Assembly (NCBI RefSeq): GCF_046119375.1
Contig: NW_027362761.1
Coordinates: 128,526,001-128,590,000, forward strand
Length of the DNA stretch: 64,000 nucleotides
From: Phyllobates terribilis
Taxonomy: Eukaryota
Reading direction: 5' to 3'
In this document: positions 5,853-63,615 of the stretch, one piece after another
Position numbering within the stretch: position 1 is the first letter of the stretch
Layout: each line of letters begins with the position of its first letter
Notes under the pieces: generated by a model
Seen by the model: the letters and a program-made list of their open reading frames with translations, nothing else
What the model was told of the DNA's origin: nothing
Databases searched by the model: none
Program-made: the position numbers and the translations under genes

Positions 5853-6862
5853 CTATAATATAAATTACAAAGGAAATACATTTTGCAAATGTAAAATATA
5901 CCGGCAGCACAAAGTCTAATAATTTATTGTATGACACATTTTAAAGTAAGTGTTCTTTAACACACACATTATCTAATATATATAGATGATATGCCTTATA
6001 GTGTCTTGTGTCTGTTTGTAACCTAAATACTGCCACCAAGTGGCTTAATGGCCACATGACATGCATTTACATACGGTGGCCAATAGAGGGGGATGCACAT
6101 GCTGCAGATTTGTCACGTTTCTTTCTGTGTAGATCGGTCATAAAACCTGAAGGGTTTCCTGACGCCAGCAAAATGAATGAGAATCCTGTAGTCTCATGCA
6201 CACATTGCTTATTTTTGACTTGCAGATTTCACCCATACTAATGCGTGTAAAATAAACGCATGTATTTTACGCTGCGTTTTTCCTGCAAAAATTTGCAGAA
6301 ATGGTGCAAAAATCTCTGCACCAAATTCTTAACATGTGCACATACCCTAAGGCTACGCGCCCAGGAGCAGGAATAGCAGAGTTTAGGACGCAGTGTATAT
6401 TCGCTGTGTCCAAAGTGCTGCGTTCTAATCACCCAGTTAAATTCGCATGTGTTCACTGAACCATGTGGATTTACTGCATTTAATGAATGGGTATGGGGGA
6501 AACTACGCAGTGGAGACTAGTGTCTCCACTACAGAAATTAACATGTTGTGGCTTGGATACCCACACCGCGGGTGAGTTTACACAGCATTAAATAGAAGCG
6601 CAGTGGGAATGGGATTTCAATAAATCCCATCCACTGTGCTTGTAATGTAGAACGCAGCGAAAATACGCTGAGTCCAAAACGCTATTATTTCTGATCGTAC
6701 GCACGTAGCCCAATTGTCTATACTGTACATGAATATGTAATAAAAGAGGGTGTGCACTACTTCTAGTTGTTTAAAAAATGGGCCTAAACTGGTCTTAACA
6801 GAACAAAAAACACAAAGCGGAAGCCGACTGGTTACAACGCAAACCTAACGCTTCCTGCCGGA

Positions 6863-7193
6863 CAGGGCTGTGGAGTCGGAATTGTGGAGTCGGAGCCCAT
6901 TTTGGTGGAGTCGGTATAAAATGTACCGACTCAAGCTCCTAAAATCTATAATAAATTGGGTACAGTAGTTCAATGCAGTTTGTGGGGAATATTTTTTCAT
7001 AAGAATTTGGGAAAGTTATGAAATGCTCTATAAATGTCCTATTCCTGATCTAAAGGTCTAGACTTTTAGCCGAGATGAATCTGTACTACAGTAAATTTAT
7101 CACTTAAACATGAGCCATGTATGAGGGAGTCGTGGAGTCGGTGTCATGGAAACTGAGGAGTCGGAGGTATGGCTTACCGACTCCACAGCCCTG
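6863..7193. mobile_element. hAT-type MITE
   Basis: TIRs CAGGGCTGTGGAGTCGG / CCGACTCCACAGCCCTG. Perfect 8-bp TSD CTGCCGGA (6855-6862, 7194-7201). Confidence 0.9.
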
Positions 7194-7637
7194 CTGCCGG
7201 ATACTAAATGCCAGAGATTGTTCCAAACGCCCTTTATACAGGGCAATTGTTGCCCACATGTCAGGTCTCCATCACTGCCTGCATAAACATGGCAAGCGAT
7301 CGAAAGAATGTTATGCAGACATAAAAATGATCAGTGGACTGCAGCGCAAGGCCTCATGTAAACAGGGGGTGTGCTGCTGACAATCATGCAGACTGCATGG
7401 GAATGTATGATGGCACAGACCCCTCATGATCATTCCATGAAAATGGAAACAAATGCATATTAGCCAGTTATATTGTAATTGCCAGTTGTTAGAGTCATTT
7501 TATCTGCCCGCTTAGGGATTCACCTATTCCTTTAAACATCTATATACTTATAATATTCCTGTTTTTCATTAGAATTATACTATGAGACAGTTTATTAGAA
7601 AAAAAAAACATTAAAAAGTGGTTGATCCCTACTTTTA

Positions 7638-7829
7638 GGCCACGGCCCCACTATCAGTATTCGGTCAGTATTTTTTCTCAGGAGTGGGAGCCAAAACCAG
7701 GTGAGGAACAATCAGAGAAAAGGTATAATAGAAACTAGTCACCAATTCTGCATTTATCACCCACTCCTGGCTGTGGCTCCCACTCCTGAGAAAAAATACT
7801 GACCAAATACTGATAGTGGGGCCGTGGCC
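7638..7829. mobile_element. PIF/Harbinger-type fold-back MITE
   Basis: GGCCACGGCCCCACTATCAGTATT / AATACTGATAGTGGGGCCGTGGCC inverted arms, TTA on the left. Same family as 10958-11140 and 25208-25401. Confidence 0.75.
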
Positions 7830-9350
7830 TTTCACTGATGAACTATCCTTAGGGTAGGTCATCAATATCAGATTGGTGTGAGTGCCAGGTGTCGCAACTC
7901 CACCAATCAGTTTTTCCTGTTGCCAGTGGTGGTCGGATGTGATCGGTTGCGGAGCGCATCAGTACAGCTCCATCAACTGAATAGGTGCAACAGCCAGGTA
8001 CTGCACATTGGCCCCTATTGGATCTGAATGAGAGTGGATATGCAGCACCCTGCTGTGGCCACTATAGTTGATTGAGTTGGGCTGATCCACTCCAAAAATG
8101 ATCACATCCGGACACTTTTGGCAGCAAAAACAGCTTATTGGTGGTGATCTTGTATTTATTACCCCCACCAATCAGATATTGATGACATGCAAGCCATCCA
8201 AATATCCAAGGCACCGGGTCAAAAAGTTTTATAGACGCCAGTGTACACGCAGGAAAAACAATAACAACGTTTTGGCCATGCAGGACCTTTATCAAAAAAG
8301 AGCACTTTTTTTTTGGCTTGATAAAGGCCCTGCGTGGCCAAAACATTATTGCTTTTTCTGTGTGTACACTGGCGTCAATAAAACTTTTTGATGATATTCA
8401 TGTCAATATAAAAGTAGTGGACAATGCATTTAAGTAAAATAACCAAAACTACACCGATAATGTAATTTTTTTTATAAGAGAACTATTAGACCTATTGTTG
8501 TCAAGGAGAACAGTTCCAATAATCCTGTATTTTAAGAAACAATTTACAATACGAAAAAAAAGAGAGACCAAAGACCTAGATTTGGCCTTAAAAAAGATTA
8601 TCCGAGACCAGCATCGATGTTTTACACTCCTCCCCCAAAAAATAAATAAAATAAAGTAAAAAGCATCCCACTCCCACAACGTGCTAAGGAAGATCAGACC
8701 TTTTTTTCAGAACAAACTGGATTGGTAATTAACACATCCCTTTCCTTTTGCATGCGGCTTGTAGACATTGCTGTCCTTCTATTGCAGGGCGTCTCTGTTG
8801 TATCAGCTTCATGCTAAGACTACCTTTCCCATCATGGTCAGACATATCAGAACATACCCCACTCTGAAGGAAGGTACAGTGAGGACCACACCTAAACTGG
8901 CTGGAAACATGGAGTACTTTAAAAGGAGCTGTGCAGCAAACTGTCGCCATGCTTTGCAATGTGCCGAACCTTAACAGCGTGTAATTTACGCACTGTTAGA
9001 GTTTGCTGGTTCGAACGGACATGACGTGACCGCAGTTATCCTATATGCACACTCGTGGTCATGTGCCACCTGACTTCTCATCCACTTGAGTGAAGATGGA
9101 AAGCTACTTGGAAAAGGACTGCAAGTCTGTATGACAGCTCAAACCGGCAAGCAGAGCTGAATCCTAACTGTGCATGGGGCTGGACAAGCCCTTTAATCCT
9201 GCTCTTGGCAAGTGAACCTCTCGGCAGACAACGGATTACGGGAGCCTATAATGTGCCAACACATTGAGTATCACATCCTGGGCATGTAGATGGTGGCACC
9301 CAGTCTGTAATAGGTTAAATGCATTATGTTCCCAGTAACGTACTTCTTAC

Positions 9351-9554
9351 CTTCAGCATATCTGGAAGCATCTTCTTCAGTTTCTTGTCCCCAAGTACTC
9401 GGAAGCAGTGCTCGAGCATCACCTTCCGGTCGGCGATGTAAAAGCTTATAGGCTTTAGTGGCACACTGAGATCCAGGCCTCCTTCTTCTATATCACTCAG
9501 CTCTTCAACATCTTCTTCCTTCGTTTCAGTGAACGGAGCAGACAATTCTGGATC
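9351..9554 (-). CDS. CAAP1: CAAP1 coding exon 2 (204 nt)
   Basis: CAG acceptor, GTAAGA donor. Encodes SDIEEGGLDLSVPLKPISFYIADRKVMLEHCFRVLGDKKLKKMLPDMLK, matching the conserved CAAP1 core. Confidence 0.93.
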
Positions 9555-10957
9555 CTGAGAACGATAAAAAACAATGGGCCGGTGTAATATGTGACTACCT
9601 TCATCTACAGAGACATGCAGTGCTGTAAGACGTCACAGAAGAAATCAAATTATTCAAAAATAATTGCATCCCCTCCTGTAAGTGACGGGTATATGTCTTA
9701 GCAGCTGAAACCCCCTTTGTCATCAGTTTTGTCGAATCTCCCACTGAAATGAATAGGAAACCATTTAATACATGGCTGCACTGGGTCGTCAGAAGTGGGA
9801 GTCAAGGTTTGCAGCGGCTGTAATAGGAGGCAGACACCTGTATGGGACAAGTCCATCAGCCATGCCATCATGCTTGACAGAAGGTATCTGGAAGGAAAAA
9901 GCCATCTGACCACCCTGAGCTTTAGAAGACCAGTACAGGTGACAACCTGAGCTGACCATGCTTTTATGTAAAATGCTATCATTGAACCTATAATGTAACA
10001 CTTTGATAAAAGAGGATGAAAAGCTTAAAATATAAAGACCCGAACATTAAGCAGGGAATATTCTATGGGTCTTTATTGATGAAATGCACGACAAGAAAAG
10101 AACTGATTTCTTTAAAGATTCGGTTGATGAAGAATGTGAGAATAGTGAGGACAAAAAAAAAAAATTAATTCTTCAATATATTAGGCTTAAAGGGGTTTTC
10201 TCAGGTCAACAGAACAGGTGATAATGATAAAGCATCTGATCACTGAGGGTCCGATTGGTCACTCACCAATCAAAAGAATGGGTGTTCTGTACCAACCACA
10301 TTTGAATCAGGCTTTTGTCATTCCAAACCTATGGGGCTGATGGGGACAGCCGAGCGCTGTACTTGGAAGTCCCAGACCAGAAAGGCTACTGTAAAGCTTT
10401 CCATTTGGTAGAACTGCTCTGTCACTGTGACATCAATGCAGCCTAATGTTGGTGATCCAGGGGACTTAGGCCACATCCTGAAGTCAGGTTCTCTCCTGAC
10501 AGCGGCCAAGGTGATCTACAGACAGCCGGGGTATGGTGGCATCAGCAGAGAAGAGTACGCTCTGGTCCTGTAGTGCTGGATGTCGGTGACTACCCACAGG
10601 CACCTAGAGAAACATGCTCTACTGTCAGGGGGCAGGAGATAACCCAAGCATGGGGTGATGACTGCTCCTCAGGATATTGCCGCACAACACAGAGGAGATA
10701 GCACTTTTCCCTCAGCTCCACTCCTGCTTACAGCTACGGATTCACCATACAGACCAATATACACAACTGTGAACGAGGGCTGACATACTTTACATCAGTA
10801 TCTCAGTCTGACGCCATTGTCAGTGCTCTGATGTATTTTCTATACATGTCTATTATCTGTCCTGATCACCATGACACCGTGCTCTAGGGACAAGTACACA
10901 CAGGGCTCGTCCATGGATCTCCCCGAAATGAATGCACTGTGGGCCGTTCTCTCCTTA

Positions 10958-11140
10958 GGCCACGTTCACACGTTCAGTATTTTCCATCAGTATCTGTAAG
11001 CCATAACCAGGCGTGGAACAATCAGAGGAGACCTATAATAGAAACACGTCACCACTTCTGTATTTATCACCCACTCCTGGTAATGGCTTACAAATACTGA
11101 TGTGAAATACTGACCAAATACTGATAGTGTGAACGTGGCC
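10958..11140. mobile_element. PIF/Harbinger-type fold-back MITE in CAAP1 intron 1
   Basis: GGCCACGTTCACAC / GTGTGAACGTGGCC TIRs, TTA left flank. Confidence 0.75.
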
Positions 11141-11204
11141 ATATGCCATCACTATGCACAATGCAGAGCCCATCAATGAAGCTAGGGGACATGGAGGGCA
11201 GCAC

Positions 11205-11318
11205 CTGCTGGCTGGACTCCGTGCTCCTCCTCTTCCTCTCCACCTGAGAGCCGGGCTCACAGGACGCTGACCTCCTCCTCTTCTTCTTCTCCTTGGAGCT
11301 CTTCTTTCCCCCGGTCAT
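11205..11318 (-). CDS. CAAP1: CAAP1 coding exon 1 (114 nt; MTGGKKSSKEKKKRRRSASCEPGSQVERKRRSTESSQQ)
   Basis: ATG in GCAGCCATGA context. N-terminus matches recalled MTGKKSSREKRRKRS...RRKRRSTDSS...QQ. Phase-0 donor CAG|GTGCTG is in frame with exon 2. Confidence 0.85.
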
Positions 11319-11728
11319 GGCTGCCAGTATAGTGACACCTCTGTACACGGTGTCTCTAGGGACACTACACAAGAAAACAACCAGCTCCCCACATGACCCA
11401 GTACAGTACTGTACAGTGCACTGCTTCCCACCAATCACAGCGCAGCAATCAGTCACATGTCCTCAGCGAGCTTCCGTACACAGTTTACCCGTAAGGACGT
11501 AAGTGATGCACGTCATGGAGAAGCCGGAGGAGCCATGTCAAGTGAGGGCACAGTATGATAGAAGACTATACAGAGCATTGCAGGAGGCGCATTGTAAGGG
11601 AATATTCGCGCTAGTTACAGTTCATGTGACTGAGGGAACACCGAAGCCGTGGAAACCAGCGGGACAGCGCCATTTCCGGTGTTCTGTAGTGGGTGAAGGC
11701 GGCAGAGGCTCGGTCACGTGACTCAAGC
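11319..11728. promoter_or_regulatory. Bidirectional promoter and 5'UTRs between CAAP1 and GEMIN7
   Basis: Divergent start codons 410 bp apart. YY1-like GCGCCATTT (11667-11675), ETS TTCCGG (11674-11679), ACTACA half-site on the minus strand (11685-11690), palindromic E-box GTCACGTGAC (11713-11722). Confidence 0.7.
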
Positions 11729-11743
11729 ATGGGTGAGACTAGA
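11729..11743 (+). CDS. GEMIN7: GEMIN7-like coding exon 1 (MGETR)
   Basis: Strong Kozak context AAGCATGG. Phase-0 donor AGA|GTGAGT joins in frame to 13632. It is the nearest compatible start I found, but this is inferred. Confidence 0.6.
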
Positions 11744-12590
11744 GTGAGTACTACTGGCTGCATGGAGACCAGGGTGATGGGATGTGGTGTGCGGCCGTAG
11801 TCCCCGCACTAGGGGTTAGAAATGGCCCATCTCTGCTTCCGTCCTGGGGCTGGCTGCAGGCGTGTTGTGATGTCTGGTGGCTTCATGTGCCTGGTTGTCA
11901 TTTATACATGGCGGTCTGTGGGAGGCTCCTTGGCAGATCCCATCATGGTGTGGAGATGACCAGGCAGCCGTGACCTCAGCCAGACGTGGCTGCTCATCAC
12001 GGATGAAGCACGTACCCATTCTAGTCTATGGGGATGGCCACATATCCATGTGCAAAAATCATGGAGCTATGACCTTTCTTGAGTGGAGTCAAAATCACCC
12101 ACACAAGTCTGAGTAGGTGAGGGTCCTGAAGCTCAGAGGGAATCCGTGTGTGATAACATTGCATTGAATAGAAGCTTCACTATTTCTCCATATGTGAAAG
12201 TCACTGATGGTAATAATAGATACACTGAGGAAAGTAGGATCCAAAACACTGACACTGGGCCGTATTTTATATATATAACAAATTCACAGACATCTGAATG
12301 AGGCCTTAAGGAAGAGTCAGACGAGGATCGCAAAGCAATGCTCAGCCTGGCGGGACAGCTGCATAGAAATGCATGCTGCCACACTGGGGTCCGGAGAGCA
12401 TTGCTTTGCGATCCTCACCCCAGCTATACGGACGTCTGAACTCATGAGGAAGTGCTTAATATCCGTGACCTAGCGGAGGGATCTGGCCGCTAACCTGTGG
12501 ACTGATACCACCAATCCGGTATTGTTCCATTTATCCCACACACAGGTATATACTGATATGGTTAGTTTGCTCTTTGATCTTCTGTTTTTT

Positions 12591-12596
<6 letters not shown>

Positions 12597-12624
<28 letters not shown>
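12597..12624. repeat. (TA)n microsatellite
   Basis: Direct read of sequence. Confidence 0.9.
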
Positions 12625-12629
<5 letters not shown>

Positions 12630-13164
12630 CAGACTCAAAATATTGAAAATAAAGTTATACTTTTTTCTTTCTTTACATTATTTTATATGTAACTATTAGT
12701 TTAGGGTTAGAAAAGTGTCTAAAATTTACCTACTGTTAATTTACAGGTTTTTTTTCTTTACAAAAGACACTTTAAAAAAAAAAAAAAAAATTGTGACTGT
12801 CATCCCAGAGGGTCCCTGTCTCTCTTCTCTGAGAAGGGAGGGTTTGTGCATGATTTAGTAGTGTCGTGGTTTTTGCAGAGCGCAGATGAGTTTGTCATTG
12901 GCTGCTGCGCTCTGAATAAGCAGCGACCAAGATGACAAAGCTCACTTTATTATACTGAGCGCGTTGTCATCTCGCCCAGTGGGCGCTCAGTGCAGTGGTA
13001 CATGAAAGTCTGTGTATAAAATCCGGTACGGGTGTGTCGTTTTATGGATGCATACAACTTACTGGTTGCATACCCTCATAGGGACCCCTTCATATAGATA
13101 TGCACAAGGTGTGATGATTGATGAAAAGTTCACTCTGTTCTGGACTTTATGAAAAGATTACCAC

Positions 13165-13474
13165 TAGTGATGAGCGAGTATGTTCAGTTAACCCTTTCGG
13201 TGAGTATGCTCGGGCCGAGCTCCGAGTAGTTACAGCTGCTCGATGATATGGTTGAATCGCTCCCGTGTGCATGATTTGCGACTGTTTGACAGCTTTATTA
13301 CATGTAAGGAATGTGTAAGAAATAGACATTCCTCACATGTAATAAAGCTGTCAAACAGTTGCAAATCATGCACAGGGAGCGATCTAACCTCATCACCGAG
13401 CAGCTGTACATACTCGGAGCTCGGCCCGAGCATACTCACCGAAAGGGTTAATAGAACATACTCGCTCAACACTA
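13165..13474. mobile_element. hAT-type fold-back MITE in GEMIN7 intron
   Basis: TAGTGATGAGCG / CGCTCAACACTA TIRs, near-perfect palindrome. Perfect 8-bp TSD ATTACCAC (13157-13164, 13475-13482). Confidence 0.9.
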
Positions 13475-13631
13475 ATTACCACGTGCAGCCCCAGCCCACC
13501 TATGTGTGACTTCATCACAGACCAGGATATTTGGCCCATCTATGATGCTCAGTAATGGAATTATCATCGACATACCAAATATTTCTATTTTTTTCTACTG
13601 TGCTGATGCCATTTTTTTCCTTTTCTCTTAG

Positions 13632-13985
13632 GAACCCCCACTTCTTCCTCAGGTTCGCATCATTCGCCTTCCCCGGCCACCATCACCTTCTAGCCGTGGT
13701 TTTGATCCAGCCTCACCACGAGCTCTGGCACATCGTAGCTCTGATGCCCATCAGAAAATCCGGTCTGATCTTCGCCTACACTTTCTTCGCAGCCTTCTTG
13801 CCTCTGCGGGTCTTCCGGTCACATTCACACTTTACCAGCGTGTCACGGTTTCCGCTGAGCGGTTCAATGCCTGTGACATAGAAGGACATAACTTCCAGGT
13901 GTCTAACCTGCAAACGCCTCTGGGTGTCCAAAAGGAGGCGCTCATCCGTGGGCCGGATATCATTTCTTACTCGTTTCATCTGTAA
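13632..13985 (+). CDS. GEMIN7: GEMIN7-like main coding exon (117 aa + stop), Sm-like fold subunit of the SMN complex
   Basis: Long pyrimidine tract then TTAG acceptor. Open frame EPPLLPQVRIIRLPRPPSPSSRGFDP...LRLHFLRSLLASAGLPVTFTLYQRVTVSAERFNACDIEGHNFQVSNLQTPLGVQKEALIRGPDIISYSFHL*. Aligns with recalled human VLRLPRGP..SRGFAP...LRERYLRSLL...FTLH...NFYVSQLQTPIGVQAEALLRCSDIISYTF. Confidence 0.92.
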   Translation, partial: EPPLLPQVRIIRLPRPPSPSSRGFDPASPRALAHRSSDAHQKIRSDLRLHFLRSLLASAGLPVTFTLYQRVTVSAERFNACDIEGHNFQVSNLQTPLGVQKEALIRGPDIISYSFHL

Positions 13986-14684
13986 GAGACCACCACCTTA
14001 TGTACATCAGCAGAATACTGTGTATGAATGGTGCATTACAATTACATACAGCCAGTCACTAATGTGCGGTGTTTCATTTCAGCTCTATAGGGTAAAGTTC
14101 CAGGTTGTAGGCGCCTATTCCACTGGCACAGACGCATTAGATGGCGCACTTTGGCGAGGTCACACAGACCCGGAGGTGCCTCTGTAAGGAACGTTATTCT
14201 CCATTGGAAAAAATACTACTTCTGCATATTTTTAATGTGTGTGACCCAGATCCCATTTACATCTTAATAGGGTTTTCCATTACTTTGGTATTGACCTTTC
14301 TTTAGGTCATCATTATCAGATTGGTGTGGGTCGATAATCTGGATCAGCTCTGGCTGGATGTGATCAGTGTATGAAGCAGAACAGCTCTGTATAGTGTTTA
14401 GTGGCAGACTACTGCAGATTGGCTCCTACTCTGTATACTGTTCCCAACTGGCCAGAGGTGACCAGAGCGGATTGATGGGAGGTCCATGCGATAACCTTCC
14501 CTAACGATAGGTCATCAGTATCAAAGCAAAGGGCAACACCTTTATATATCAGTCGCGTAAATGACACTGAACATAATTTTCAAAAGAAGAAATGCTTGTT
14601 GATGTGGATATTGGCGTCACATACCCTGCAGTGATTTTTCTAATGTATCCAGCGCTGGTAAGAAGAAGCTGCTTGTAGATCCTA

Positions 14685-14690
14685 AATAAA
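14685..14690 (+). terminator. Candidate GEMIN7 polyadenylation signal AATAAA
   Basis: First canonical hexamer I found downstream of the stop. Not validated. Confidence 0.35.
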
Positions 14691-15711
14691 GCAGCACTGG
14701 ACACATTAGTTAGATGCTCCAAGAGGGAATTAAAGGATTACCAGGATCCGGTGTAAGGGCTATGTAACTAATATCAAGACGCAGGAGCGTGTTATAAATA
14801 ATTAACACTTTGCGATCTAACAGCAATGGGTTAATATTTGTGTGCTAACCCTTTTCATGCTTCTAATGGGCCATGTCCTGATTAAAGGGGTGGTCTAGGC
14901 ATCTAATATTGATTACTTATCTGTAGAATAGATTATAAATATGGGATCAGTGGTGGTCCGATACCCAGCACTCCCATCTGTAATTGGCTCGGGCGGTAAG
15001 ATCTATACATTGAACGCAGATGAACAGCACAGATCCGCTCAATGAGCAGAGTGCTACAGATCGGCTCCTATTCAGCCGCTGGGCATTGAATGGGGTTGTG
15101 CCGATTGGCAAATTGACATCTGGCCAGAGCCGATATCAGCTGATCGGTAGGGGTGCCATGTGTCAAACCGCCACCCTTTGTAATATTGATGACCTATCCT
15201 GAAGCTGTTTCATTAATATTAGATGCATGAACAACCCCTTTCATTTTTTTAAATGGATTAACATATAAAGTAATGCAAGGTTGCTACTACTTGTAGGATA
15301 GTAGACCTGTACTGCCGATTAGGTATTCTACTAGGTACTTTCTCCTCTCAAGTGCAGTGAAAAGCTAATACTTGGTGTATAGATCTCATATACCATACTG
15401 ATATCTAATACAACTACAATATTCTTCTAGAGATAAATATACAAGTGTATTGGAAGACTACATTACACTTCCTATTGGGCCTATGTCCATTCATGCAGGA
15501 CCCGAGTGCTCAGGACCTGGACCTCCTACCAATCTGCAGGACATTTCAGCATCTATGACATATTGAGTAAGTTATAATGTAGGTAGACTGTAAGGCATCA
15601 TCCCTATGCAGGGTGACCGCATACTATTAGTGGGCGAGACTTAAATATTGCATTGCTATGCCATTCATGATTACAAAATAAAAGATTCACAACATACATT
15701 CAGTGCAAAAA

Positions 15712-15717
15712 TTTATT
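15712..15717 (-). terminator. Candidate PLAA polyadenylation signal AATAAA
   Basis: TTTATT on the plus strand about 140 nt after the stop, in an AT-rich 3'UTR. Confidence 0.55.
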
Positions 15718-15857
15718 TAAGTAAATTTATATTTTAAAGACGAGACAAACTTTCAGCATTCAATCCACAGCATTCAGTGTATTCATGGCATGTTATGGTA
15801 AAAAAGAAATAAGCTGCAGGGTTTGCCTTTCCCCATTGGTGGTAATGAGAAAAAAAA

Positions 15858-16423
15858 TTAGAGAGTATTTAAGAGCAACCTGCAACACTCGCTAACTTTG
15901 GCTGGGTCCGTGACAGACATGTATTTCTTAATCTGAGAGTCGACTCCCAGAGACTTGGCTAACTGCACGGCATTGGAGTCTTCACTGATCAGAGTCCCAA
16001 GGGCCACGAGAAGTCTGAACGCAGCTTCAAGGTCGTTCACAACTTCCAGAACTGTACTGATCGCGGACAGACACTGGGCTTTCCCTTCTAAGTCTTCTAC
16101 CCTATGTAAACAGGTGGCATAGTTGAGGATCAGAGTGGCCAGAGCGACGTGGACGTTCTTATTAGAAACAGATTTGAGTTCAATGGATTTTGTTATTAGG
16201 GCGTCTCTTTGTGACATCATAAACTTTGCACCTGCTTCAAGGGAAAAACAATTGCATAGTGTCCGAAGAGCAAGCAGCTGATTGGCCTGTCTGCCCGCCG
16301 GCCGCATTATCTGGAAGAGGTAGTTGGTGAACACTCTCCCTTCTCTCTCGCTGCAGAACATTTCATTGACAGTGGGATTCTTGACAGCTAACCGGAGGAT
16401 ATCCAACACAGGAAAAACTATAT
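15858..16423 (-). CDS. PLAA: PLAA coding exon 14 (566 nt incl. TAA; PUL domain C-terminus)
   Basis: CTCCAG acceptor. [12 protein letters not shown]...[14 protein letters not shown]...[28 protein letters not shown]. Confidence 0.97.
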
Positions 16424-16639
16424 CTGGAGAGGAAAGAAAAGGAGAAGCTATCTTACTTGTATAACCAGTAAAACATGAAAAAAATCTAATATCTGAAACA
16501 CATACTACGGCCTCGTTCAGAAGTCCGTGTTTCCAGTATGTGTCCATTTTCACACGTACTGCAGACACTTACACACATAGACCCGTTCAAATGAATGGAT
16601 CTGAGCACGTCAGTGTGTCCACGGAGACCCACGTCTGTC

Positions 16640-19068
16640 CACATGTCTGCTTTACATCAGCACAACTTTGGAACCAAATTTTTTTTTGTTAGGGCGCTAT
16701 AAAGGTTAAAGTTGACCAGCGATTTCTCATTTTTCCAACAAAATTTACAAAACCATTTTTTTAGGGACCACATCACATTTGAAGTCACTTTGAGGGGTCT
16801 TTATGACAGAAAATACCCAAAAGTGACACCATTCTAAAAACTGCACCCCTCAAGGTGCTCAAAACCACATTCAAGAAGTTTATTAACCCTTCAGGTGCTT
16901 CACAGGAATTTTTGGAATGTGAAAATAAACAATGAACATTTAACTTTTTTTTCACAAAAATGTTACTTTAGACCCAATTTTTTTTTATTTTCGCAGGGGT
17001 AACAGGAAAAAAAAGGACCAAAAAATTTGTTGTGCAATTTTCCCTGAGCACACCGATACATCATATGTGGGGAAAAACCACTGTTTGGGCGCACGGCAGG
17101 GCTCAGAAGGGAAGGAGCGCCATTTGACTTTTTGAATGTAAAATTTGCTTGATCAATTGGCAGACGCCATGTTGTGTTTGGGGAGCCCCTGATATGCCTA
17201 AATAGTGGAAACCCCCCCCACAAGTGACACCATTTTGGAAACTAGACCCCTCAAGGAACTTCTCTAGGTGTGTGGTCCCCGCCCTGCATGTTTTACGGTT
17301 TTTAGACACCCAAAAAAAACGTGGGGATCGCTCGTGCATTGCAGGCAATTCCCGTGTTTTTTTTTGGCTGTATAACAGCCGAGAAACATATGGGGTGGAG
17401 ACTCGGCTCGACTTTTTTTTTTCTTTACTTTTAAAAAAATCCCAACCCTAATCCTAACACAGCCCTAGCCCTAGAGTTTGTTTATTACGCTGTTCCTCGT
17501 GTGGTATAAGTGATTAGACAACTTTATTCTTCGGGTCGGTGCGATTACAGCGATACCAGATTTATATTGGGTTTTTATGTTTAGAAGCTGTCATACACTA
17601 AAAGATGCTTTTTTCGCAAAGACTAGTTTTTCCAGATTTCGGCCGACAGTTATGTAAGGGCTTGTTTTTTTTTTGCGGGACAAGTTGACGTTTTTATTGG
17701 TGCCATTTTCGGGCACGTGACATTTTTAGATCGCTTTCTACTCTGATTTTTGGGAGGCAGAATAAAGAAAAAACAGCAATTCAGGAATTTTTTTACATTT
17801 TTTTTATGTCATTCCACATGTGGTAAAATTGATAAGGTAGCTTTATTCTTCGGGTCAGTACGTTTACAGCGATACCACATTTATATCTTTTTTATGTTTG
17901 GCACTTTTAAATAAAACTTTTTATAATATATAAAATCTATTTATAAAATATTTTTTTTTGCATCGCTTTATTCTGAGAGCTATAACTTATTTTTCGGATG
18001 ATGGAGCTGTATGGTGGCTTGTTTTTTGCGGGACAAGATGACGTTTTCAGCGGTACCATTTTTATTTACATTAGTCTTTTTGATCGCGTTTTATTTGATT
18101 TTTTGTTTGGCGGTATGATAAAGCATCCTTTTTTGCTTAATTTTTTATTTTTTTACTGTGTTCACTAAAGGGGTTAACTAGTGGGAACGTTTTATAGGTC
18201 AGGTCGTTTCGGACGCGGCAATACCAAATATGTGTACTTTTATTGTTTTTTTCATAATATTTATGGGTATAGTATATATATTTTTGTGGTTTTGGATTAT
18301 TTTTTCATTTTTTTTATATTTTTAATTTTTTTTTTCACTTTATACTTTGTCCCACTATGGGACTTTCATTTTTTGCCGGCTGATCGCTTGTATAGCATAG
18401 GGATGCCGTCAGCTCTGCACTGGCACAAGTTAGATAGATTGTGCACTGCGCACGATCTATCCAACTTCCTGATGCCTGGTGACCCGTGGCAACAATCGGG
18501 ACTTTGTGAACACAGCGCGGGGTCTCCGATCCAAGGTAAGAGGGGCGCTCTTACCTCTGCTTGCCCCGGAAATGCTGTGATAGACTTCGATCGCAGCATT
18601 TCGGGGGTTAATGTGCCGGGAGCTGTGCGGGACCGCTCCTGGCACATAGTACTGGGTGTCAGCTGTTAGAATCAGCTGACACCAGGCGGCGATCACGCCT
18701 GCACAACTTTGAATTTTTTTTTCACCACTTAAATATAAAAGAACCTATACATGTTTGGTATCTACGAACTCGTAATGACCTGGAGAATAATGATGGCAGG
18801 TCAGTTTTAGCAATCAGTGAACGTGGTAAAAAAAGGATCCAAAAAACTCTGGAATTGCATTTTTTTTGCAGTTTCACCGCACTTGGAATTTTTTTCCTGT
18901 TTTCCAGCACACGATATTGTAAAACCAGTGATGGCGTTTAAAAGTACAACTCGTCCCGCAAAAAATAAGCCCTCACATGGCCATATTGAACGAAAATTAA
19001 AAAAGTTCTGGCTCTGGGAAGAAGGGGAGCAAAAAATGAAAACACAAAAACACAAGGTCGTTAAGGGG
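16640..19068. mobile_element. Truncated or mosaic piggyBac-like TTAA non-autonomous element
   Basis: Ends AAGGGG + TTAA (19069-19072). About 16640-18700 is the reverse complement of parts of 49680-53420. 18722-19068 is the reverse complement of about 47815-48180. Confidence 0.7.
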
Positions 19069-19365: not shown

Positions 19366-19699
19366 CTATTTGCAATGAAAGACGATTAACCAACACACGG
19401 TAATGATCTACTTAACATTTAAATATGCACACATTTAGACCCATCACAGCAAGCGAGAGGTTAATAATGACAAGAAATATAGTGTAGATGGTGAAGTGTG
19501 AGGGAATGCCTAACCCCTTCCCACCAATCCTGGTTTATACACACTAGAATTATTCAGAGTTCACCAGGAAACCACAGACATCTGCACAGCTAGCTGGACA
19601 TCCCTACTGGACCGTCTACCATAGAAACAATTCATCATTGGTCTTAAAGGAATTGTTCCAACTTGGTAAGAAAGTATCACCTATCTTACTGCTGCTAAT

Positions 19700-20738
19700 G
19701 TTCAATAGACAATGAGTGCAGCTGTAGAGTGCGGCATGGCAATCTGACCATTCACTGCCTGTGAGACTGTCAGACATGGCTGGGATCTGTTCAATAGACA
19801 ATGAGTGCAGCTGTAGAGTGTGGCATGGCAATCTGACCATTCACTGCCTGTGAGACTGTCAGACATGGCTGGGATCTGTTCAATAGACAATGAGTGCAGC
19901 TGTAGAGTGCGGCATGGCAATCTGACCGTTCACTGCCTGTGAGACTGTCAGACATGGCTGGGATCTGTTCAATAGACAATGAGTGCGGCATGGCAATCCG
20001 ACCATTCACTGTGAGACTGTCAGACATGGCTGGGATCTGTTCAATAGACAATGAGTGCAGCTGTAGAGTGCGGCATGGCAATCTGACCATTCACTGCCTG
20101 TGAGACTGTCAGACATGGCTGGGATCTGTTCAATAGACAATGAGTGCAGCTGTAGAGTGCGGCATGGCAATCTGACCGTTCACTGCCTGTGAGACTGTCA
20201 GACATGGCTGGGATCTGTTCAATAGACAATGAGTGCGGCATGGCAATCCGACCATTCACTGTGAGACTGTCAGACATGGCTGGGATCTGTTCAATAGACA
20301 ATGAGTGCAGCTGTAGAGTGTGGCATGGCAATCCGACCACTGCCTGTGAGACTGTCAGACATGGCTGGGATCTGTTCAATAGACAATGAGTGCAGCTGTA
20401 GAGTGCGGCATGGCAATCTGACCATTCACTGCCTGTGAGACTGTCAGACATGGCTGGGATCTGTTCAATAGACAATGAGTGCAGCTGTAGAGTGCGGCAT
20501 GGCAATCTGACCATTCACTTTGAGACTGTCAGACATGGCTGGGATCTGTTCAATAGACAATGAATGCAGCTGTAGAGTGCGGCATGGCAATCTGACCATT
20601 CACTGCCTGTGAGACTGTCAGACATGGCTGGGATCTGTTCAATAGACAATGAGTGCGGCATGGCAATCCGACCATTCACTGTGAGACTGTCAGACATGGC
20701 TGGGATCTGTTCAATAGACAATGAGTGCAGCTGTAGAG
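19700..20738. repeat. Minisatellite, 89-bp unit with 72- and 85-bp deletion variants (about 12 units)
   Basis: TTCAATAGAC recurs at 19701, 19790, 19879, 19968, 20040, 20129, 20218, 20290, 20375, 20464, 20549, 20638, 20710. Confidence 0.95.
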
Positions 20739-28631: not shown

Positions 28632-30943
28632 CAGTGGGGGAAATAAGTATTTGATCCCTTGCTGTTTTTGTAAGTTTGCCCACTGACAAAGACATGAACA
28701 GTCTATAATTTTAAGGGTAGGTTAATTTTAACATTGAGAGAAAATATCCCCCAAAAAAAAAATCAAGAAATGACATTGTATAAATTAGATAAATTTATTT
28801 GCATTTTGCAGTGAGAAATAAGTATTTGATCCCCTACAAACCATTATGAGTTTTGGCTCCTACAGACCAGTTAAAGGCTCCTAATCAACTTGATACCTGC
28901 ATTAAAGACAGCTGTCTTACATAGTCACCTGTATAAAAGACTGCTGTCCACAGACTCAATTAATCAGTCAGCCTCTAACCTCTACAACATGAGCAAGACC
29001 AAAGAGCTTTCTAAGGGTGTCAGGGACAAGATCATAGACCTGCACAAAGCTAGAATGGGCTACAAAACCAGAAGAAAGTCTCTGGGTGAGAAGGAGACAA
29101 CGGTTGGTGCAATAGTAAGAAAATGGAAGAAATACAAAATGACTGTCAATCGACATCGATCTGGGGCACCATGCAAAATCTCACCTCATGGGGTATCCTT
29201 GATCATGAGAAAGGTGAGAGATCAGCCTAAAACTACATGGGGGGAAACTTGTTAATGATCTCCAGACAGCTGGGACCACAGTCACCAAGAAAACCATTGG
29301 TAACACATTACGCCTTAAAGGTTTAAAATCCTGCAGTGCCCACAAGGTCCCCGCCTGCTCAAGAAGGCACATGTGCAGGCCCGTCTGAAGTTTGCCAATG
29401 AACACCTGGATGATTCTGTGAGTTATTGGGAGAAGGTACTGTGGTCAGATGAGACAAAAATTGAGCTCTTTGGCATTAACTCAACTCGCCTTGTTTGGAG
29501 GAATAAGAAGGACGAGTACAACCCTAAGAACATTGTCCCAACCGTGAAGCATGGTGGGGGGAACATTATACTTATGACCCAAAACATACAGCCAAGGCAA
29601 CAAAGGAGTGGCTCAAAAGGAAGCACAGTAAGGTCACGGAGTGGCCTAGCCAGTCTCCAGACCTTAATCCCATAGAAAACTTATGGAGGGAGTTGAAGCT
29701 CCGAGTTGCCAAGCGACAGCCTCAAAATCGGAATGATTTAGAGATGATCTGCAAAGAGGAGTGGACCAAAATTCCTCCTGACATGTGCGCAAACCTTCAA
29801 CTCATCAACTACAAAAAACGTCTGACTGCTGTGCTTGCCAACAAGGGTTTTGCCACTAAGTATTAAGTGTTGTTTGCCAGAGGGATCAAATACTTATTTC
29901 TCACTGCAAAATGCAAAAAATTGTATCTAATTTATACAATGTGATTTTCTTGATTTTTTTTGGATATTCTATCTCTCAATGTTAAAATTAACCTACCCTT
30001 AGGCTGTGTTCACACGATGCGTATTTCATGCGTTTCCGCGGCGTTTTTGCAGTTGCGTAAACGCCGCGGAAACGCATGAAAAACGCATGGTAGAAGGGCA
30101 GCAATGTTCCCCAATGGAAATCCGCATGTGCTGTGCCCATGATGCGGATTTTTCCGCAGCGTTAACGCTGCGGTCAAAAATCCGCAGCATGTCAATTAAT
30201 TTTGCGGAAATGCGGCGATTTCGCCGCCATTGACTTGCATTAGAACGCGCCAATTCCGCAAGACAGCATTTGTACTTGCGTAATTGGTGCGTTCTAATGT
30301 GCGGATGGTACCCGGGTGTGGAGGAGAGGAGAGTCTCATCCACACCCAGGTACCATTAAAAAAGCTGTAAAAAGAAGAATAAAATAAAAAATAAATGTAT
30401 TCTTACCTTCTGTCGGCCCGCGCAGCGCTCCCGCTTGGTTCCCGGCACTTGCAGTGAGTTGTAGGACCTGCGGTGACGTCAGAGTCATGTGACGGGTCAC
30501 GTGACGCTGACGTCGGCAGGTCTTTCAATTCAAAGTTGCCGGGAGAACGGAGTGAGCAGGACAGCGCGGGCCATCGGAGGTAAGTATATACACTCTCTCG
30601 GTTCACACTGTATAAATCCATGCTGTTTGCATGGATTTATATAGTGTGACCTAGTTATCAAGCACTTTCCAGGTGATGCTAACATCGCCTGGAAAGCGCT
30701 TGTCAATCTGCATGCGGAAACGCATGTGAATCTGCATGTGGATCCGCATGTATTCTGCAGGAAAAACGCATGCACAATCTGCATGCGTTTTTTCTGCCAG
30801 GGAGATGCAGAAATGATGCAGAAATTTTCTGCTTCATTTCTGCATCGTGTGCACATACCCTTAAAATGATAGACTGTTCCCGTTTTTGTCAGTGGGCAAA
30901 CTTACAAAAACAGCAATGGATCAAATAATTATTTCCCCCACTG
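28632..30943 (+). mobile_element. Tc1 transposon, inactivated, with a MITE in its right TIR
   Basis: TA-CAGTGGGGGAAATAAGTATTTGATCC ... GGATCAAATAATTATTTCCCCCACTG-TA. Frameshifted transposase from [20 protein letters not shown] (28989) through [13 protein letters not shown] to about 29865. Confidence 0.93.
30002..30860. mobile_element. PIF/Harbinger-type non-autonomous element nested in a Tc1 TIR
   Basis: TTA TSD (29999-30001, 30861-30863). GGCTGTGTTCACAC / GTGTGCACATACCC ends. Reverse complement of the family at 62837-63615. Confidence 0.85.
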
Positions 30944-62836: not shown

Positions 62837-63615
62837 GGCTATGTGCCCACGATGCAGAAATTCTCCGGATTTTTCCTGAGCGTTTCTGCATCTCCCTGGC
62901 AGAAAAAACGCATGCGGATTGTACATGCGTTTTTCCTGCCAGGGACATGTGGATGTGAAGCGTTCTTCACATGCATTTCCGCATGCGGGTTGTCAAGCGA
63001 TTTTAGCATCACTTGGAAAGTGCTTGTCAACTTGGTCACACTATATAAATCCATGCAACCGGCATATATAGTGTGACCCGAGAGAATGTATAAAAATAAA
63101 TATATACTTACCCTCCGATGGCTCGCGCTGTCTTGTTTCACTGTCCCGGCTGCCGGCAGCGGTACACTGAAGGACCTGCCGACGTCAGCGTCACGTGACC
63201 CGTCACATGACTGTGACGTCAGCGCAGGTCCTTCAGTCCACCGCGAACTGCCGGCATGAGAGGAAGAGCGCATCGGGGGCCACCAGAAGGTAAGTATATA
63301 TTTATTTTTTATTTTATTCTTTTTTTTTTTTTTTTTACAGTTTTCTATGGTACCCGGGTCCAGAGGAGTGTCTCCTGTCCTCCACACCCGGGTACCATCC
63401 CCAAATTAGAACGCATGGAATGCGCATCTACATATACAGTGATGCGTAATCCATGCGTTCTAAGGCAAGTCAATGGCGGCGTAAATACAGCACTTCCGCA
63501 AAATAATTGGTAGTGCTTCGTTTTTTTCCGCAATGATAATCCTCAGCGGAATCTTCCGCTGCATGTGCACAGCCGCTGCGGAAATGCTTAAAAAACGCAT
63601 CGTGAGCACACAGCC
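62837..63615. mobile_element. PIF/Harbinger-type non-autonomous element, copy 2
   Basis: 3-bp TSD TCA (62834-62836, 63616-63618). Same family as 30002-30860, in the opposite orientation. Confidence 0.8.

What the first reader, a model, noticed from the sequence alone, without database searches (positions are those of the whole stretch)
11729..13985. Hidden GEMIN7-like gene inserted between CAAP1 and PLAA, invisible to the ORF track
Seen: a Met-free 117-codon plus-strand frame (13632-13985) behind a strong acceptor, plus an in-phase 15-nt ATG exon 1.9 kb upstream. The peptide carries the GEMIN7 signatures RLPR...SRGF, FLRSLL and NFQVSNLQTPLGVQKEALIR..DIISYSF. Established as recalled: human PLAA and CAAP1 are neighbours on 9p21 with no GEMIN7 between them, human GEMIN7 is on 19q13, and its CDS is uninterrupted. 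Inference: this is a lineage-specific relocation or retrocopy that recruited a start codon and promoter from the CAAP1 upstream region. It looks diverged (about one extra residue in SAERFNA; GPD where human has CSD), so it may be the sole relocated ortholog or a paralog.
Basis: partly seen in the sequence, partly recalled or inferred. Interest (0 to 1): 0.85.

Follow-up and report, generated by a model that had tools for sequence, protein, structure and literature searches.

The report
Frog gemin7 gene, relocated beside CAAP1
This is the frog's ordinary, expressed and already annotated gemin7 gene (a subunit of the SMN snRNP-assembly complex); its place between CAAP1 and PLAA comes from a single-gene move in the ancestor of modern frogs (Neobatrachia), not from a retrocopy or a newly recruited start codon.

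Summary
Window 13632-13985 (+) encodes a Met-free 117-residue Gemin7 domain (Pfam PF11095, E 2e-29). The predicted fold matches human Gemin7. RNA contigs from four runs join it to the 15-nt ATG coding stretch at 11729-11743 through a GT..AG intron.

The gene is not hidden. The 122-aa product is identical to RefSeq XP_073523327.1, gem-associated protein 7 isoform X2 of Phyllobates terribilis.

The relocation reading is right in part.
- Ancestral site: Ascaphus, Xenopus and Pelobates have gemin7 just downstream of NKPD1. Five more non-neobatrachian frogs and the axolotl have both genes on one record.
- Derived site: all four neobatrachians looked up (Bufo, Mixophyes, Hyperolius, Gastrophryne) have it head-to-head with CAAP1. 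In nine neobatrachians gemin7 and NKPD1 lie on different chromosomes.

The retrocopy and recruited-start-codon readings fail. The start-codon mini-exon and the phase-0 intron sit at the same position in frogs with the ancestral locus, so both predate the move and were carried along. The divergent residues are also frog-wide and predate the move.

The relocated gene is under purifying selection (dN/dS about 0.12). No second copy was seen, but this genome could not be searched.

This is a modest result: an annotated gene plus an apparently unreported single-gene transposition shared by all sampled neobatrachians.

The parts
11186..11412 (-). CAAP1 exon 1: coding start ATG at 11318 (MTGGKKSSKEKKKRRR...) and 5'UTR up to about 11394-11412
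   Evidence: ORF translation. 81% blastn match of 11186-11319 to the annotated CAAP1 first coding exon of Mixophyes L003 9365-9498. RNA contigs end at 11394-11412. The downstream exon 9324-9545 hits Pfam CAAP1.
11413..11486 (.). Short divergent promoter interval between the CAAP1 and gemin7 transcript ends (approximate)
   Evidence: Contig ends: CAAP1 at 11394-11412, gemin7 at 11487-11505. CpG o/e is 0.55-0.81 here against 0.27-0.38 in the flanks. Contig ends are not mapped transcription starts.
11487..11743 (+). gemin7 exon 1: 5'UTR plus a 15-nt coding part ATG GGT GAG ACT AGA (11729-11743), with donor GTGAGT
   Evidence: RNA contigs 11487/11502/11505-11743 are joined to 13632. Sequence. The product equals RefSeq isoform X2, P0086.
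11506..11541 (+). Alternative start (MHVMEKPEEPCQ) with proximal donor GT at 11542, giving RefSeq isoform X1. In transcripts that use the distal donor, the same ATG opens a 71-codon uORF ending at 11721.
   Evidence: ATG list and sequence. P0085 begins MHVMEKPEEPCQ then EPPLL. This junction was not seen in the RNA contigs.
11744..13631 (+). Phase-0 intron of 1888 nt (GT..AG), at the same position as in other frogs
   Evidence: Joint 11743->13632 in 4 runs. Homologous acceptors and donors in L001, L002, L003.
13165..13474 (.). Palindromic MITE-like repeat inside the intron (not part of the gene's function)
   Evidence: Inverted repeats of 100 nt at 90% and 55 nt at 93%. RNA-contig word depth is in the thousands with many loose ends.
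13632..13985 (+). gemin7 exon 2 coding part: 117 codons plus TAA, holding the whole Gemin7 Sm-like domain
   Evidence: AlphaFold model with pLDDT 81.5 whose best PDB matches are human Gemin7 7bbl_D and 1y96_B, TM 0.85-0.86.
13986..14331 (+). gemin7 3'UTR. Depth falls after about 14058 in 3 of 4 runs. The far end abuts or overlaps the long PLAA 3'UTR.
   Evidence: Contigs 13632-14058 and 13632-14331, and the depth table. No canonical AATAAA on the + strand before 14685, so the 3' end is not fixed.
14303..16425 (-). PLAA last exon: PUL-domain coding part 15858-16425 and 3'UTR, with a proximal poly(A) site at about 15700 and a long form reaching at least 14303
   Evidence: Pfam PUL E 1.2e-46. Contigs 15699/15702-16425 carry poly(T) loose ends, and contig 14303-16425 is continuous in X4.

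Best explanation
This is the functional gemin7 ortholog of a dendrobatid frog, most likely Phyllobates terribilis, and apparently its only copy. It encodes the Sm-like subunit that pairs with Gemin6 and binds Gemin8 in the SMN complex, which loads Sm proteins onto snRNAs. It has two coding exons. A short first exon supplies only Met plus four residues. The second exon supplies the other 117 residues.

Shown here:
- It is transcribed divergently from CAAP1, with transcript ends roughly 75-110 bp apart.
- It ends tail-to-tail against the PLAA 3'UTR.
- Frogs outside Neobatrachia have gemin7 next to NKPD1. All sampled neobatrachians have it beside CAAP1.
- The intron and the start exon predate the move.

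Inferred: in the common ancestor of the sampled Neobatrachia, a genomic segment carrying both exons and the intron moved from the ancestral NKPD1 - gemin7 - LRR gene (PPP1R37-like) neighbourhood into the CAAP1-PLAA intergenic region on another chromosome. The old copy was then lost. The molecular route (duplicative DNA transposition followed by loss, or another route) is also only inferred, as is any dependence on CAAP1 promoter elements.
For: Identity:
- Pfam Gemin7 E 2.2e-29.
- Human Gemin7 PDB chains at E 1e-18.
- Predicted fold best matches 7bbl_D and 1y96_B, followed by Sm/LSm proteins.
- 76 homologs, nearly all of those with a name being named gem-associated protein 7.
- The spliced product equals P0086, XP_073523327.1.

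Expression and splicing:
- Joint 11743->13632 in four RNA runs, with a silent intron.

Selection:
- Window against Mixophyes, both relocated copies: dN 0.088, dS 0.72-0.78, omega 0.11-0.12.

Ancestral locus:
- NKPD1 (KAP_NTPase), then Gemin7, then an LRR gene, in Ascaphus L001 and Xenopus L002.
- NKPD1 then Gemin7 in Pelobates.
- Adjacent locus tags GDO86_015541 and 015542 in Hymenochirus.
- Same record length for both genes in Bombina, Discoglossus, Pelodytes, Spea and Ambystoma.
- The lizard Elgaria has gemin7 between a TGF-beta gene and a DRY_EERY (CLASRP-like) gene.

Derived locus:
- CAAP1(-), Gemin7(+), PLAA(-) in Bufo and Mixophyes.
- CAAP1(-), Gemin7(+) in Hyperolius and Gastrophryne.
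- gemin7 and NKPD1 on records of different length in nine neobatrachians.

Move rather than retained duplicate:
- No Gemin7 relic within 10 kb on either side of Mixophyes NKPD1, with positive controls in L001 and L002.
- One gemin7 gene per frog species among the hits.

DNA-level move:
- Identical intron position and phase, and a similar M-x-E-[TK]-x start exon, at both loci.

Orthology:
- Frogs are monophyletic (100/100). Neobatrachians form one clade (93/93) nested within them on a short branch of 0.065.
Against: - The window's own genome could not be searched for a second gemin7 copy or for its NKPD1 locus.
- The CAAP1-PLAA interval of a non-neobatrachian frog could not be fetched, so the 'empty' target site was not seen. 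Human CAAP1-PLAA adjacency is my recollection, not a tool result.
- The LRR neighbour was not confirmed by name as PPP1R37 (one search was uninformative).
- Heleophrynidae and Sooglossoidea, the earliest neobatrachian branches, were not sampled.
- Lithobates showed no neighbours within 10 kb, so it counts only through the different-chromosome evidence.
- Exon 1 carries five upstream ATGs, so which AUG is used in vivo is not proven.
- Logan contigs have no strand and do not map transcript ends precisely.
Confidence: 0.88

Rival explanations
1. Processed retrocopy of GEMIN7 that landed next to CAAP1 and then acquired a new start-codon exon and intron from CAAP1 upstream sequence.
For: In amniotes and a caecilian the CDS is a single exon (357-nt gene in Rhinatrema; 381 nt in Elgaria), so a split CDS looks like a novelty when compared with human alone. 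The gene sits directly at another gene's promoter.
Against: The split start codon is anuran-wide and is present at the ancestral NKPD1-linked locus. Ascaphus has ATG AAA GAG ACG | GTGAGA ... CAG | GAC CCC, and Xenopus has ...ATG AAG GAG AAA AGC | GTAAGA ... CAG | GAC CCA. These share phase and position with the window and Mixophyes. Independent gain of an intron at the identical codon is very unlikely.
Confidence: 0.03
2. Retroposition of an unspliced, intron-retaining gemin7 pre-mRNA. The copy arrived without a promoter and survived because it landed beside the CAAP1 promoter, which now drives it divergently. The parental copy was lost later.
For: The relocated unit appears to be just one transcription unit. 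It fills the CAAP1-PLAA interval, and its 5' end lies only about 75-110 bp from the CAAP1 transcript end. No noncoding similarity to the ancestral promoter is detectable: only exon 2 aligns with L001 and L002.
Against: No poly(A) remnant or target-site duplication was looked for successfully. After well over 100 My such marks, and any promoter similarity, would be erased whichever mechanism acted, so the absence of alignment is uninformative. Intron-retaining retrocopies are rare compared with DNA-mediated transposed duplicates (general knowledge).
Confidence: 0.1
3. The copy here is a paralog. The original gemin7 persists elsewhere in this genome, at the NKPD1 locus or another site.
For: The window's genome could not be searched. 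Duplicative transposition necessarily passes through a two-copy stage.
Against: Every neobatrachian in the protein search contributes only isoforms of one gemin7 gene. The ones looked up are the CAAP1-linked gene. The 10 kb on each side of Mixophyes NKPD1 hold no Gemin7-like sequence. Omega of 0.11-0.12 and exon word depth far above the silent intron fit a sole essential copy. Scan notes on 770 windows of this genome mention GEMIN7 only here, which is weak evidence because coverage is incomplete.
Confidence: 0.05
4. The CAAP1-gemin7-PLAA order is ancestral for frogs or tetrapods, and gemin7 moved to the NKPD1 neighbourhood in the other lineages.
For: None specific. In the caecilian Rhinatrema gemin7 and NKPD1 are on different records, which shows that this linkage is not immutable.
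Against: It would need repeated identical moves into the same neighbourhood. NKPD1-linked gemin7 occurs in successive outgroups to Neobatrachia: Ascaphus, Bombina and Discoglossus, pipoids and pelobatoids. The axolotl has both genes on the same chromosome. A lizard has gemin7 in a neighbourhood (TGF-beta and CLASRP-like genes) that I recall as 19q13 in human.
Confidence: 0.02

Closest known systems
Vertebrate GEMIN7 (gem-associated protein 7; human structures 1Y96 chain B and 7BBL chain D)
   Same: A full-length Pfam Gemin7 domain with about 50-57% identity to the human domain. The predicted Sm-like fold is an N-terminal helix plus a five-stranded bent sheet. The N-terminal RLPR...SRGF motif and the C-terminal NFQVS.LQTPLGVQ.EAL.R..DIISY.F block are conserved.
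   Different: Traits shared by all frogs. The start codon lies on a separate upstream exon. The motif is RLPR[PA]PSPSGRGF instead of RLPRGPDGxSRGF. The linker is about 10-15 residues shorter. There is one extra residue (A-x-R-F-N-A). RGPD replaces RC[PS]D. The anuran stem branch is long, at 0.85 changes per site.
RefSeq gem-associated protein 7 isoform X2 of Phyllobates terribilis (XP_073523327.1) and the equivalent models in about 20 other frogs
   Same: The 122-aa sequence is identical to the window's spliced product. Isoform X1 uses the alternative ATG at 11506, which is also present in the window.
   Different: Nothing at the protein level. The annotation does not comment on the change of locus.
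Lineage-specific transposed single genes in anurans ('rebel' BUSCO genes; Chen et al., bioRxiv 10.1101/2024.10.27.620512)
   Same: A single conserved gene breaks an otherwise very stable frog synteny, with a clean split between archaeobatrachians and neobatrachians. That preprint reports the same pattern for twnk and mrpl43 among 34 genes.
   Different: gemin7 is not mentioned in the preprint's main text. Its supplementary tables are not held. Here the exact donor and acceptor neighbourhoods, the retained intron and the new head-to-head promoter arrangement are resolved.
Head-to-head gene pairs with bidirectional promoters
   Same: Two divergent genes have transcript 5' ends less than about 110 bp apart in a region of raised CpG content.
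   Different: The pairing was created secondarily by a gene insertion. Shared regulation was not measured.

Membership tests
GEMIN7 (Pfam PF11095; SMN-complex subunit) | Sequence match to the Gemin7 family profile above the curated threshold, over the full domain | tested here: met
   101.6 bits against a cutoff of 25, E 2.2e-29, profile positions 2-76 of 76.
GEMIN7 (Pfam PF11095; SMN-complex subunit) | Sm-like fold as in the solved human Gemin7 | tested here: met
   AlphaFold2 model with mean pLDDT 81.5 (88-94 over the domain). Best PDB matches are 7bbl_D and 1y96_B at TM 0.85-0.86 by target, followed by Sm/LSm proteins.
GEMIN7 (Pfam PF11095; SMN-complex subunit) | Orthology: groups with annotated GEMIN7 of related species in a species-tree-like pattern | tested here: met
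   Frog clade 100/100 and neobatrachian clade 93/93. Ranoid and hyloid subclades are recovered, and the window groups with Ranitomeya.
GEMIN7 (Pfam PF11095; SMN-complex subunit) | Binds Gemin6 and Gemin8 within the SMN complex | not testable with these tools
   Only inferred from domain conservation. No complex was modelled.
GEMIN7 (Pfam PF11095; SMN-complex subunit) | Expressed, correctly spliced mRNA under purifying selection | tested here: met
   Junction 11743->13632 in 4 RNA runs. Omega 0.11-0.12 against Mixophyes.
Processed retrocopy (retrogene) | Lacks the parental introns | tested here: not met
   The phase-0 intron lies at the same codon as at the ancestral locus of Ascaphus and Xenopus.
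Processed retrocopy (retrogene) | Poly(A) tract and target-site duplications at the insertion borders | not tested
   An event well over 100 My old is not expected to keep such marks. No outgroup empty site was available for comparison.
Relocated (transposed) single-copy gene | Different flanking genes in ingroup and outgroups, with outgroups agreeing among themselves | tested here: met
   NKPD1-linked in Ascaphus, Xenopus, Pelobates and Hymenochirus. CAAP1-linked in the window, Bufo, Mixophyes, Hyperolius and Gastrophryne.
Relocated (transposed) single-copy gene | No copy left at the ancestral site | tested here: inconclusive
   No relic within 10 kb of Mixophyes NKPD1, and one gene per species in the protein search. 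The window's own genome was not searched, and PPP1R37 was not reached in L005.

The most novel reading that the evidence does not exclude
The move of an apparently single-copy housekeeping gene with its intron into the CAAP1-PLAA interval is an unreported rare genomic change shared by all sampled neobatrachians. The gene may have arrived without a promoter, for example as an unspliced-RNA retrocopy, and become dependent on the CAAP1 promoter. That would couple snRNP-assembly capacity to CAAP1 regulation in more than 95% of frog species.
Probability: 0.12. Interest if true: 0.5.

Novelty: new member of a known kind. Interest (0 to 1): 0.3.

Why it matters
The gene itself adds nothing new: it is a well-known family and is already annotated in this species.

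The evolutionary point has modest value. Frog gene order is unusually stable, so a clean single-gene transposition shared by Ranoidea, Hyloidea and Myobatrachoidea, and absent from every earlier-branching frog sampled, is a useful rare-genomic-change marker for Neobatrachia.

It is also a resolved example of how an apparently single-copy housekeeping gene can change chromosome while keeping its intron, and end up in a compact head-to-head pair with an unrelated gene.

There is a methodological lesson too. Comparison with human alone made frog-wide features (split start codon, sequence divergence) look like consequences of the relocation, when they predate it.

Tried and rejected
- The processed-retrocopy and recruited-start-codon readings are rejected on intron and exon homology.
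- I looked for co-transferred noncoding DNA by blastn of window 11000-16000 against the Ascaphus and Xenopus ancestral loci. Only exon 2 aligns. Against Mixophyes, the CAAP1 exon 1, a 42-nt block at 11510-11551 and the PLAA last exon also align.
- I tried to confirm the LRR neighbour as PPP1R37 with the protein atlas, using its first coding exon. The result was uninformative, with a best score of 0.63.
- I checked whether the perfect E-box GTCACGTGAC before the ATG marks promoters across the window. The other two copies lie in copies of one repeat, so no conclusion follows.
- The bacterial-type promoter and terminator scan was run, and as expected it says nothing for a vertebrate promoter.
- Look-ups that gave no synteny: the Anomaloglossus protein is not on record, and Rhinatrema and Lithobates show no neighbours within 10 kb.
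- Literature searches for GEMIN7 with CAAP1, with 'bidirectional promoter', or with frog and synteny terms found no paper on this arrangement.
- The alternative donor at 11541 (isoform X1) was not seen in the RNA contigs, which drop rare forms.
Full report
**What is there**

Window 13632-13985 on the + strand is an open, Met-free frame of 117 codons ending in TAA. It lies behind a polypyrimidine tract and an AG at 13630-13631.

About 1.9 kb upstream, ATG GGT GAG ACT AGA (11729-11743) is followed by GTGAGT and is in phase with that frame.

The peptide is a full-length Gemin7 domain:
- Pfam PF11095 scores E 2.2e-29, 101.6 bits against a cutoff of 25.
- Human Gemin7 chains 7bbl_D and 1y96_B match at E about 1e-18.
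- An AlphaFold2 model built on a 32-sequence alignment has mean pLDDT 81.5, and 88-94 over the domain. It folds as a helix followed by a five-stranded sheet.
- The model's best PDB matches are human Gemin7 at TM 0.85-0.86 by target, followed by Sm/LSm proteins.

The mechanical ORF list does not show the frame. In that narrow sense the gene is 'invisible'.

**Expression and gene model**

Contigs from four RNA runs of the same organism each carry the joint 11743->13632 (GT..AG, 1888 nt skipped) at word depth 132-385. Intron bins 12410-13075 have depth 0, which also argues against DNA contamination.

The contigs begin at about 11487-11505, so exon 1 is roughly 240-260 nt, of which only the last 15 nt are coding.

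CAAP1 exon 1 contigs on the other side end at 11394-11412. The CAAP1 ATG is at 11318 on the minus strand. The two transcript ends are therefore only about 75-110 bp apart, in a region of raised CpG content. This agrees with the scan's own note s1-201041 on a compact bidirectional promoter. Contig ends are not mapped transcription starts.

Downstream, gemin7 contigs reach 14058 or 14331. They meet the long form of the PLAA 3'UTR, which runs from the PUL-domain last exon (15858-16425, minus strand) down to at least 14303. A proximal PLAA poly(A) site is marked by poly(T) loose ends at 15699-15702. The gene therefore fills almost the whole CAAP1-PLAA interval.

**The gene is not hidden**

The protein search returned 76 homologs. 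Nearly all of those that carry a name are called gem-associated protein 7, and they include about 20 frog species.

The spliced 122-aa product (MGETR plus the 117 residues) is identical to P0086, RefSeq XP_073523327.1, 'gem-associated protein 7 isoform X2 [Phyllobates terribilis]'.

Isoform X1 of the same species (P0085, MHVMEKPEEPCQ then EPPLL...) corresponds to the window's ATG at 11506 with a proximal donor at 11541|GT.

The window is therefore almost certainly from that species or a very close relative.

**Where gemin7 sits in other animals**

| Group | Species | Arrangement |
|---|---|---|
| Non-neobatrachian frogs | Ascaphus truei (L001), Xenopus laevis (L002) | NKPD1 (KAP_NTPase), then gemin7, then an LRR gene of 721-817 aa, all on one strand |
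| Non-neobatrachian frogs | Pelobates fuscus | NKPD1, then gemin7 |
| Non-neobatrachian frogs | Hymenochirus | Consecutive locus tags GDO86_015541 and 015542 |
| Non-neobatrachian frogs and axolotl | Bombina, Discoglossus, Pelodytes, Spea, Ambystoma | Both genes on records of identical length |
| Lizard | Elgaria | gemin7 between a TGF-beta gene and a DRY_EERY (CLASRP-like) gene |
| Neobatrachia | Bufo bufo, Mixophyes fleayi (L003) | CAAP1(-), gemin7(+), PLAA(-) |
| Neobatrachia | Hyperolius, Gastrophryne | CAAP1(-), gemin7(+) |

From my own knowledge, human GEMIN7 lies at 19q13.32 beside PPP1R37, NKPD1, ZNF296 and CLASRP, so the non-neobatrachian pattern is the ancestral neighbourhood.

In nine neobatrachians gemin7 and NKPD1 lie on records of different length. 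These are Mixophyes, Bufo, Ranitomeya, Hyperolius, Gastrophryne, Lithobates, Engystomops, Rhinoderma and Anomaloglossus.

A scan note also places an NKPD1-like gene of this same genome on another piece (s1-245139). I did not check that note.

The split follows the frog tree exactly. Ranoidea, Hyloidea and Myobatrachoidea have the derived state, and every earlier branch has the ancestral one. A single relocation on the stem of the sampled Neobatrachia is the parsimonious reading. Heleophrynidae and Sooglossoidea were not sampled.

The coding intron is at the same codon and phase in all four loci for which I had DNA:

| Locus | Exon 1 end and donor | Acceptor and exon 2 start |
|---|---|---|
| Ascaphus | ATG AAA GAG ACG \| GTGAGA | CAG \| GAC CCC CCA |
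| Xenopus | ...ATG AAG GAG AAA AGC \| GTAAGA | CAG \| GAC CCA CCT |
| Mixophyes | ATG GAT GTT AAA AGT \| GTGAGT | CAG \| GAG TCT CTA |
| Window | ATG GGT GAG ACT AGA \| GTGAGT | TAG \| GAA CCC CCA |

The mini-exon peptides are also alike (M-x-E-[TK]-x).

The start-codon exon and the intron therefore existed at the ancestral locus and travelled with the gene. This is not a processed retrocopy, and the start codon was not recruited from CAAP1 upstream sequence.

The single-exon CDS of a caecilian (357 nt) and a lizard (381 nt) shows that the split start is an anuran innovation older than the move.

These are the extra residue in SAERFNA, RGPD, PPSPSGRGF and a shortened linker. In the tree the change is concentrated on the anuran stem (0.85 changes per site), whereas the neobatrachian stem is short (0.065).

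The data cannot tell whether the segment moved as DNA (duplicative transposition followed by loss of the parent) or, much less commonly, as an unspliced RNA. Outside exon 2 nothing aligns with the ancestral loci, and no outgroup empty site could be fetched.

**One copy, under constraint**

- dN/dS between the two relocated copies (window against Mixophyes) is 0.11-0.12 at an unsaturated dS of 0.72-0.78. Comparisons with Ascaphus and Xenopus give 0.06-0.09 at saturated dS.
- The 10 kb on each side of Mixophyes NKPD1 contain no Gemin7-like sequence, while the same search recovers the gene in L001 and L002.
- Each frog species contributes only isoforms of one gene to the protein search.

I could not search the window's own genome, so a second copy there remains formally possible.

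**Literature**

No paper in the searchable library combines GEMIN7 with CAAP1, with 'bidirectional promoter', or with frog synteny.

A 2024 preprint (10.1101/2024.10.27.620512) catalogues 34 'rebel' BUSCO genes with lineage-specific synteny in anurans. They include differences between archaeobatrachians and neobatrachians such as twnk and mrpl43. It does not mention gemin7 in its text, and its supplements are not held.

The kind of event is therefore known. This instance appears unreported, though it can be read directly from public annotations.

**Verdict**

The gene is an ordinary, annotated, expressed gemin7. The relocation is real and is shared by all sampled neobatrachians rather than being specific to this lineage or to a paralog. 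The retrocopy and recruited-start-codon readings are refuted.

Interest is modest (0.3). The value lies in a clean phylogenetic marker and a resolved case of single-gene transposition with intron retention and a new head-to-head promoter arrangement.

Noticed in passing
window 13165-13474: A near-perfect palindrome of about 310 nt (arms of 100 nt at 90% and 55 nt at 93%) sits inside the gemin7 intron. Its RNA-contig word depth is 6,000-18,000 with many divergent loose ends, which suggests a very abundant, transcribed MITE-like repeat family.
   Followed up: partly
window 11506-11728: gemin7 exon 1 holds five upstream ATGs. One opens a 71-codon uORF (11506-11721) that stops 8 nt before the main ATG. 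Translation of the main ORF would need leaky scanning, reinitiation or downstream transcription starts.
   Followed up: partly
window 11713-11722; also 30496-30505 and 63190-63199: A perfect palindromic E-box GTCACGTGAC lies 6 nt before the gemin7 ATG. There are three copies in the window against 0.01 expected. The other two lie in copies of one repeat element, so the excess is repeat-driven. The motif is not conserved at the Mixophyes start.
   Followed up: partly
window 14303-15702: PLAA has a proximal poly(A) site about 160 nt after its stop, marked by poly(T) loose ends at 15699-15702. It also has a much longer 3'UTR form that reaches the gemin7 3'UTR, so convergent transcripts may overlap around 14033-14331.
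   Followed up: partly
Rhinatrema bivittatum records: In this caecilian gemin7 (387-Mb record) and NKPD1 (103-Mb record) are on different chromosomes, and no gene lies within 10 kb of gemin7. The gemin7-NKPD1 linkage may have been broken independently there.
   Followed up: no
alignment A1 and tree: Gemin7 changed in a burst on the anuran stem (0.85 changes per site). The start codon shifted to an upstream exon, the linker shortened by about 10-15 residues, one residue was inserted, and GPDG became PSPS in the RLPR...SRGF motif. Before and after that, evolution was slow.
   Followed up: partly
window 11510-11551 and L003 9751-9792: A 42-nt noncoding block at the 5' end of gemin7 exon 1, overlapping the alternative ATG and donor, is 83% identical between the window and Mixophyes. 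It may be a conserved core-promoter or alternative first-exon element of the new locus.
   Followed up: no
window 19616-20514 (-): Tandemly repeated ORFs with the unit '...LQLHSLSIEQIPAMSDSLTGSEWSDCHAALYSCTHCLLN...' appear in the ORF list inside a PLAA intron. This looks like a tandem repeat array.
   Followed up: no
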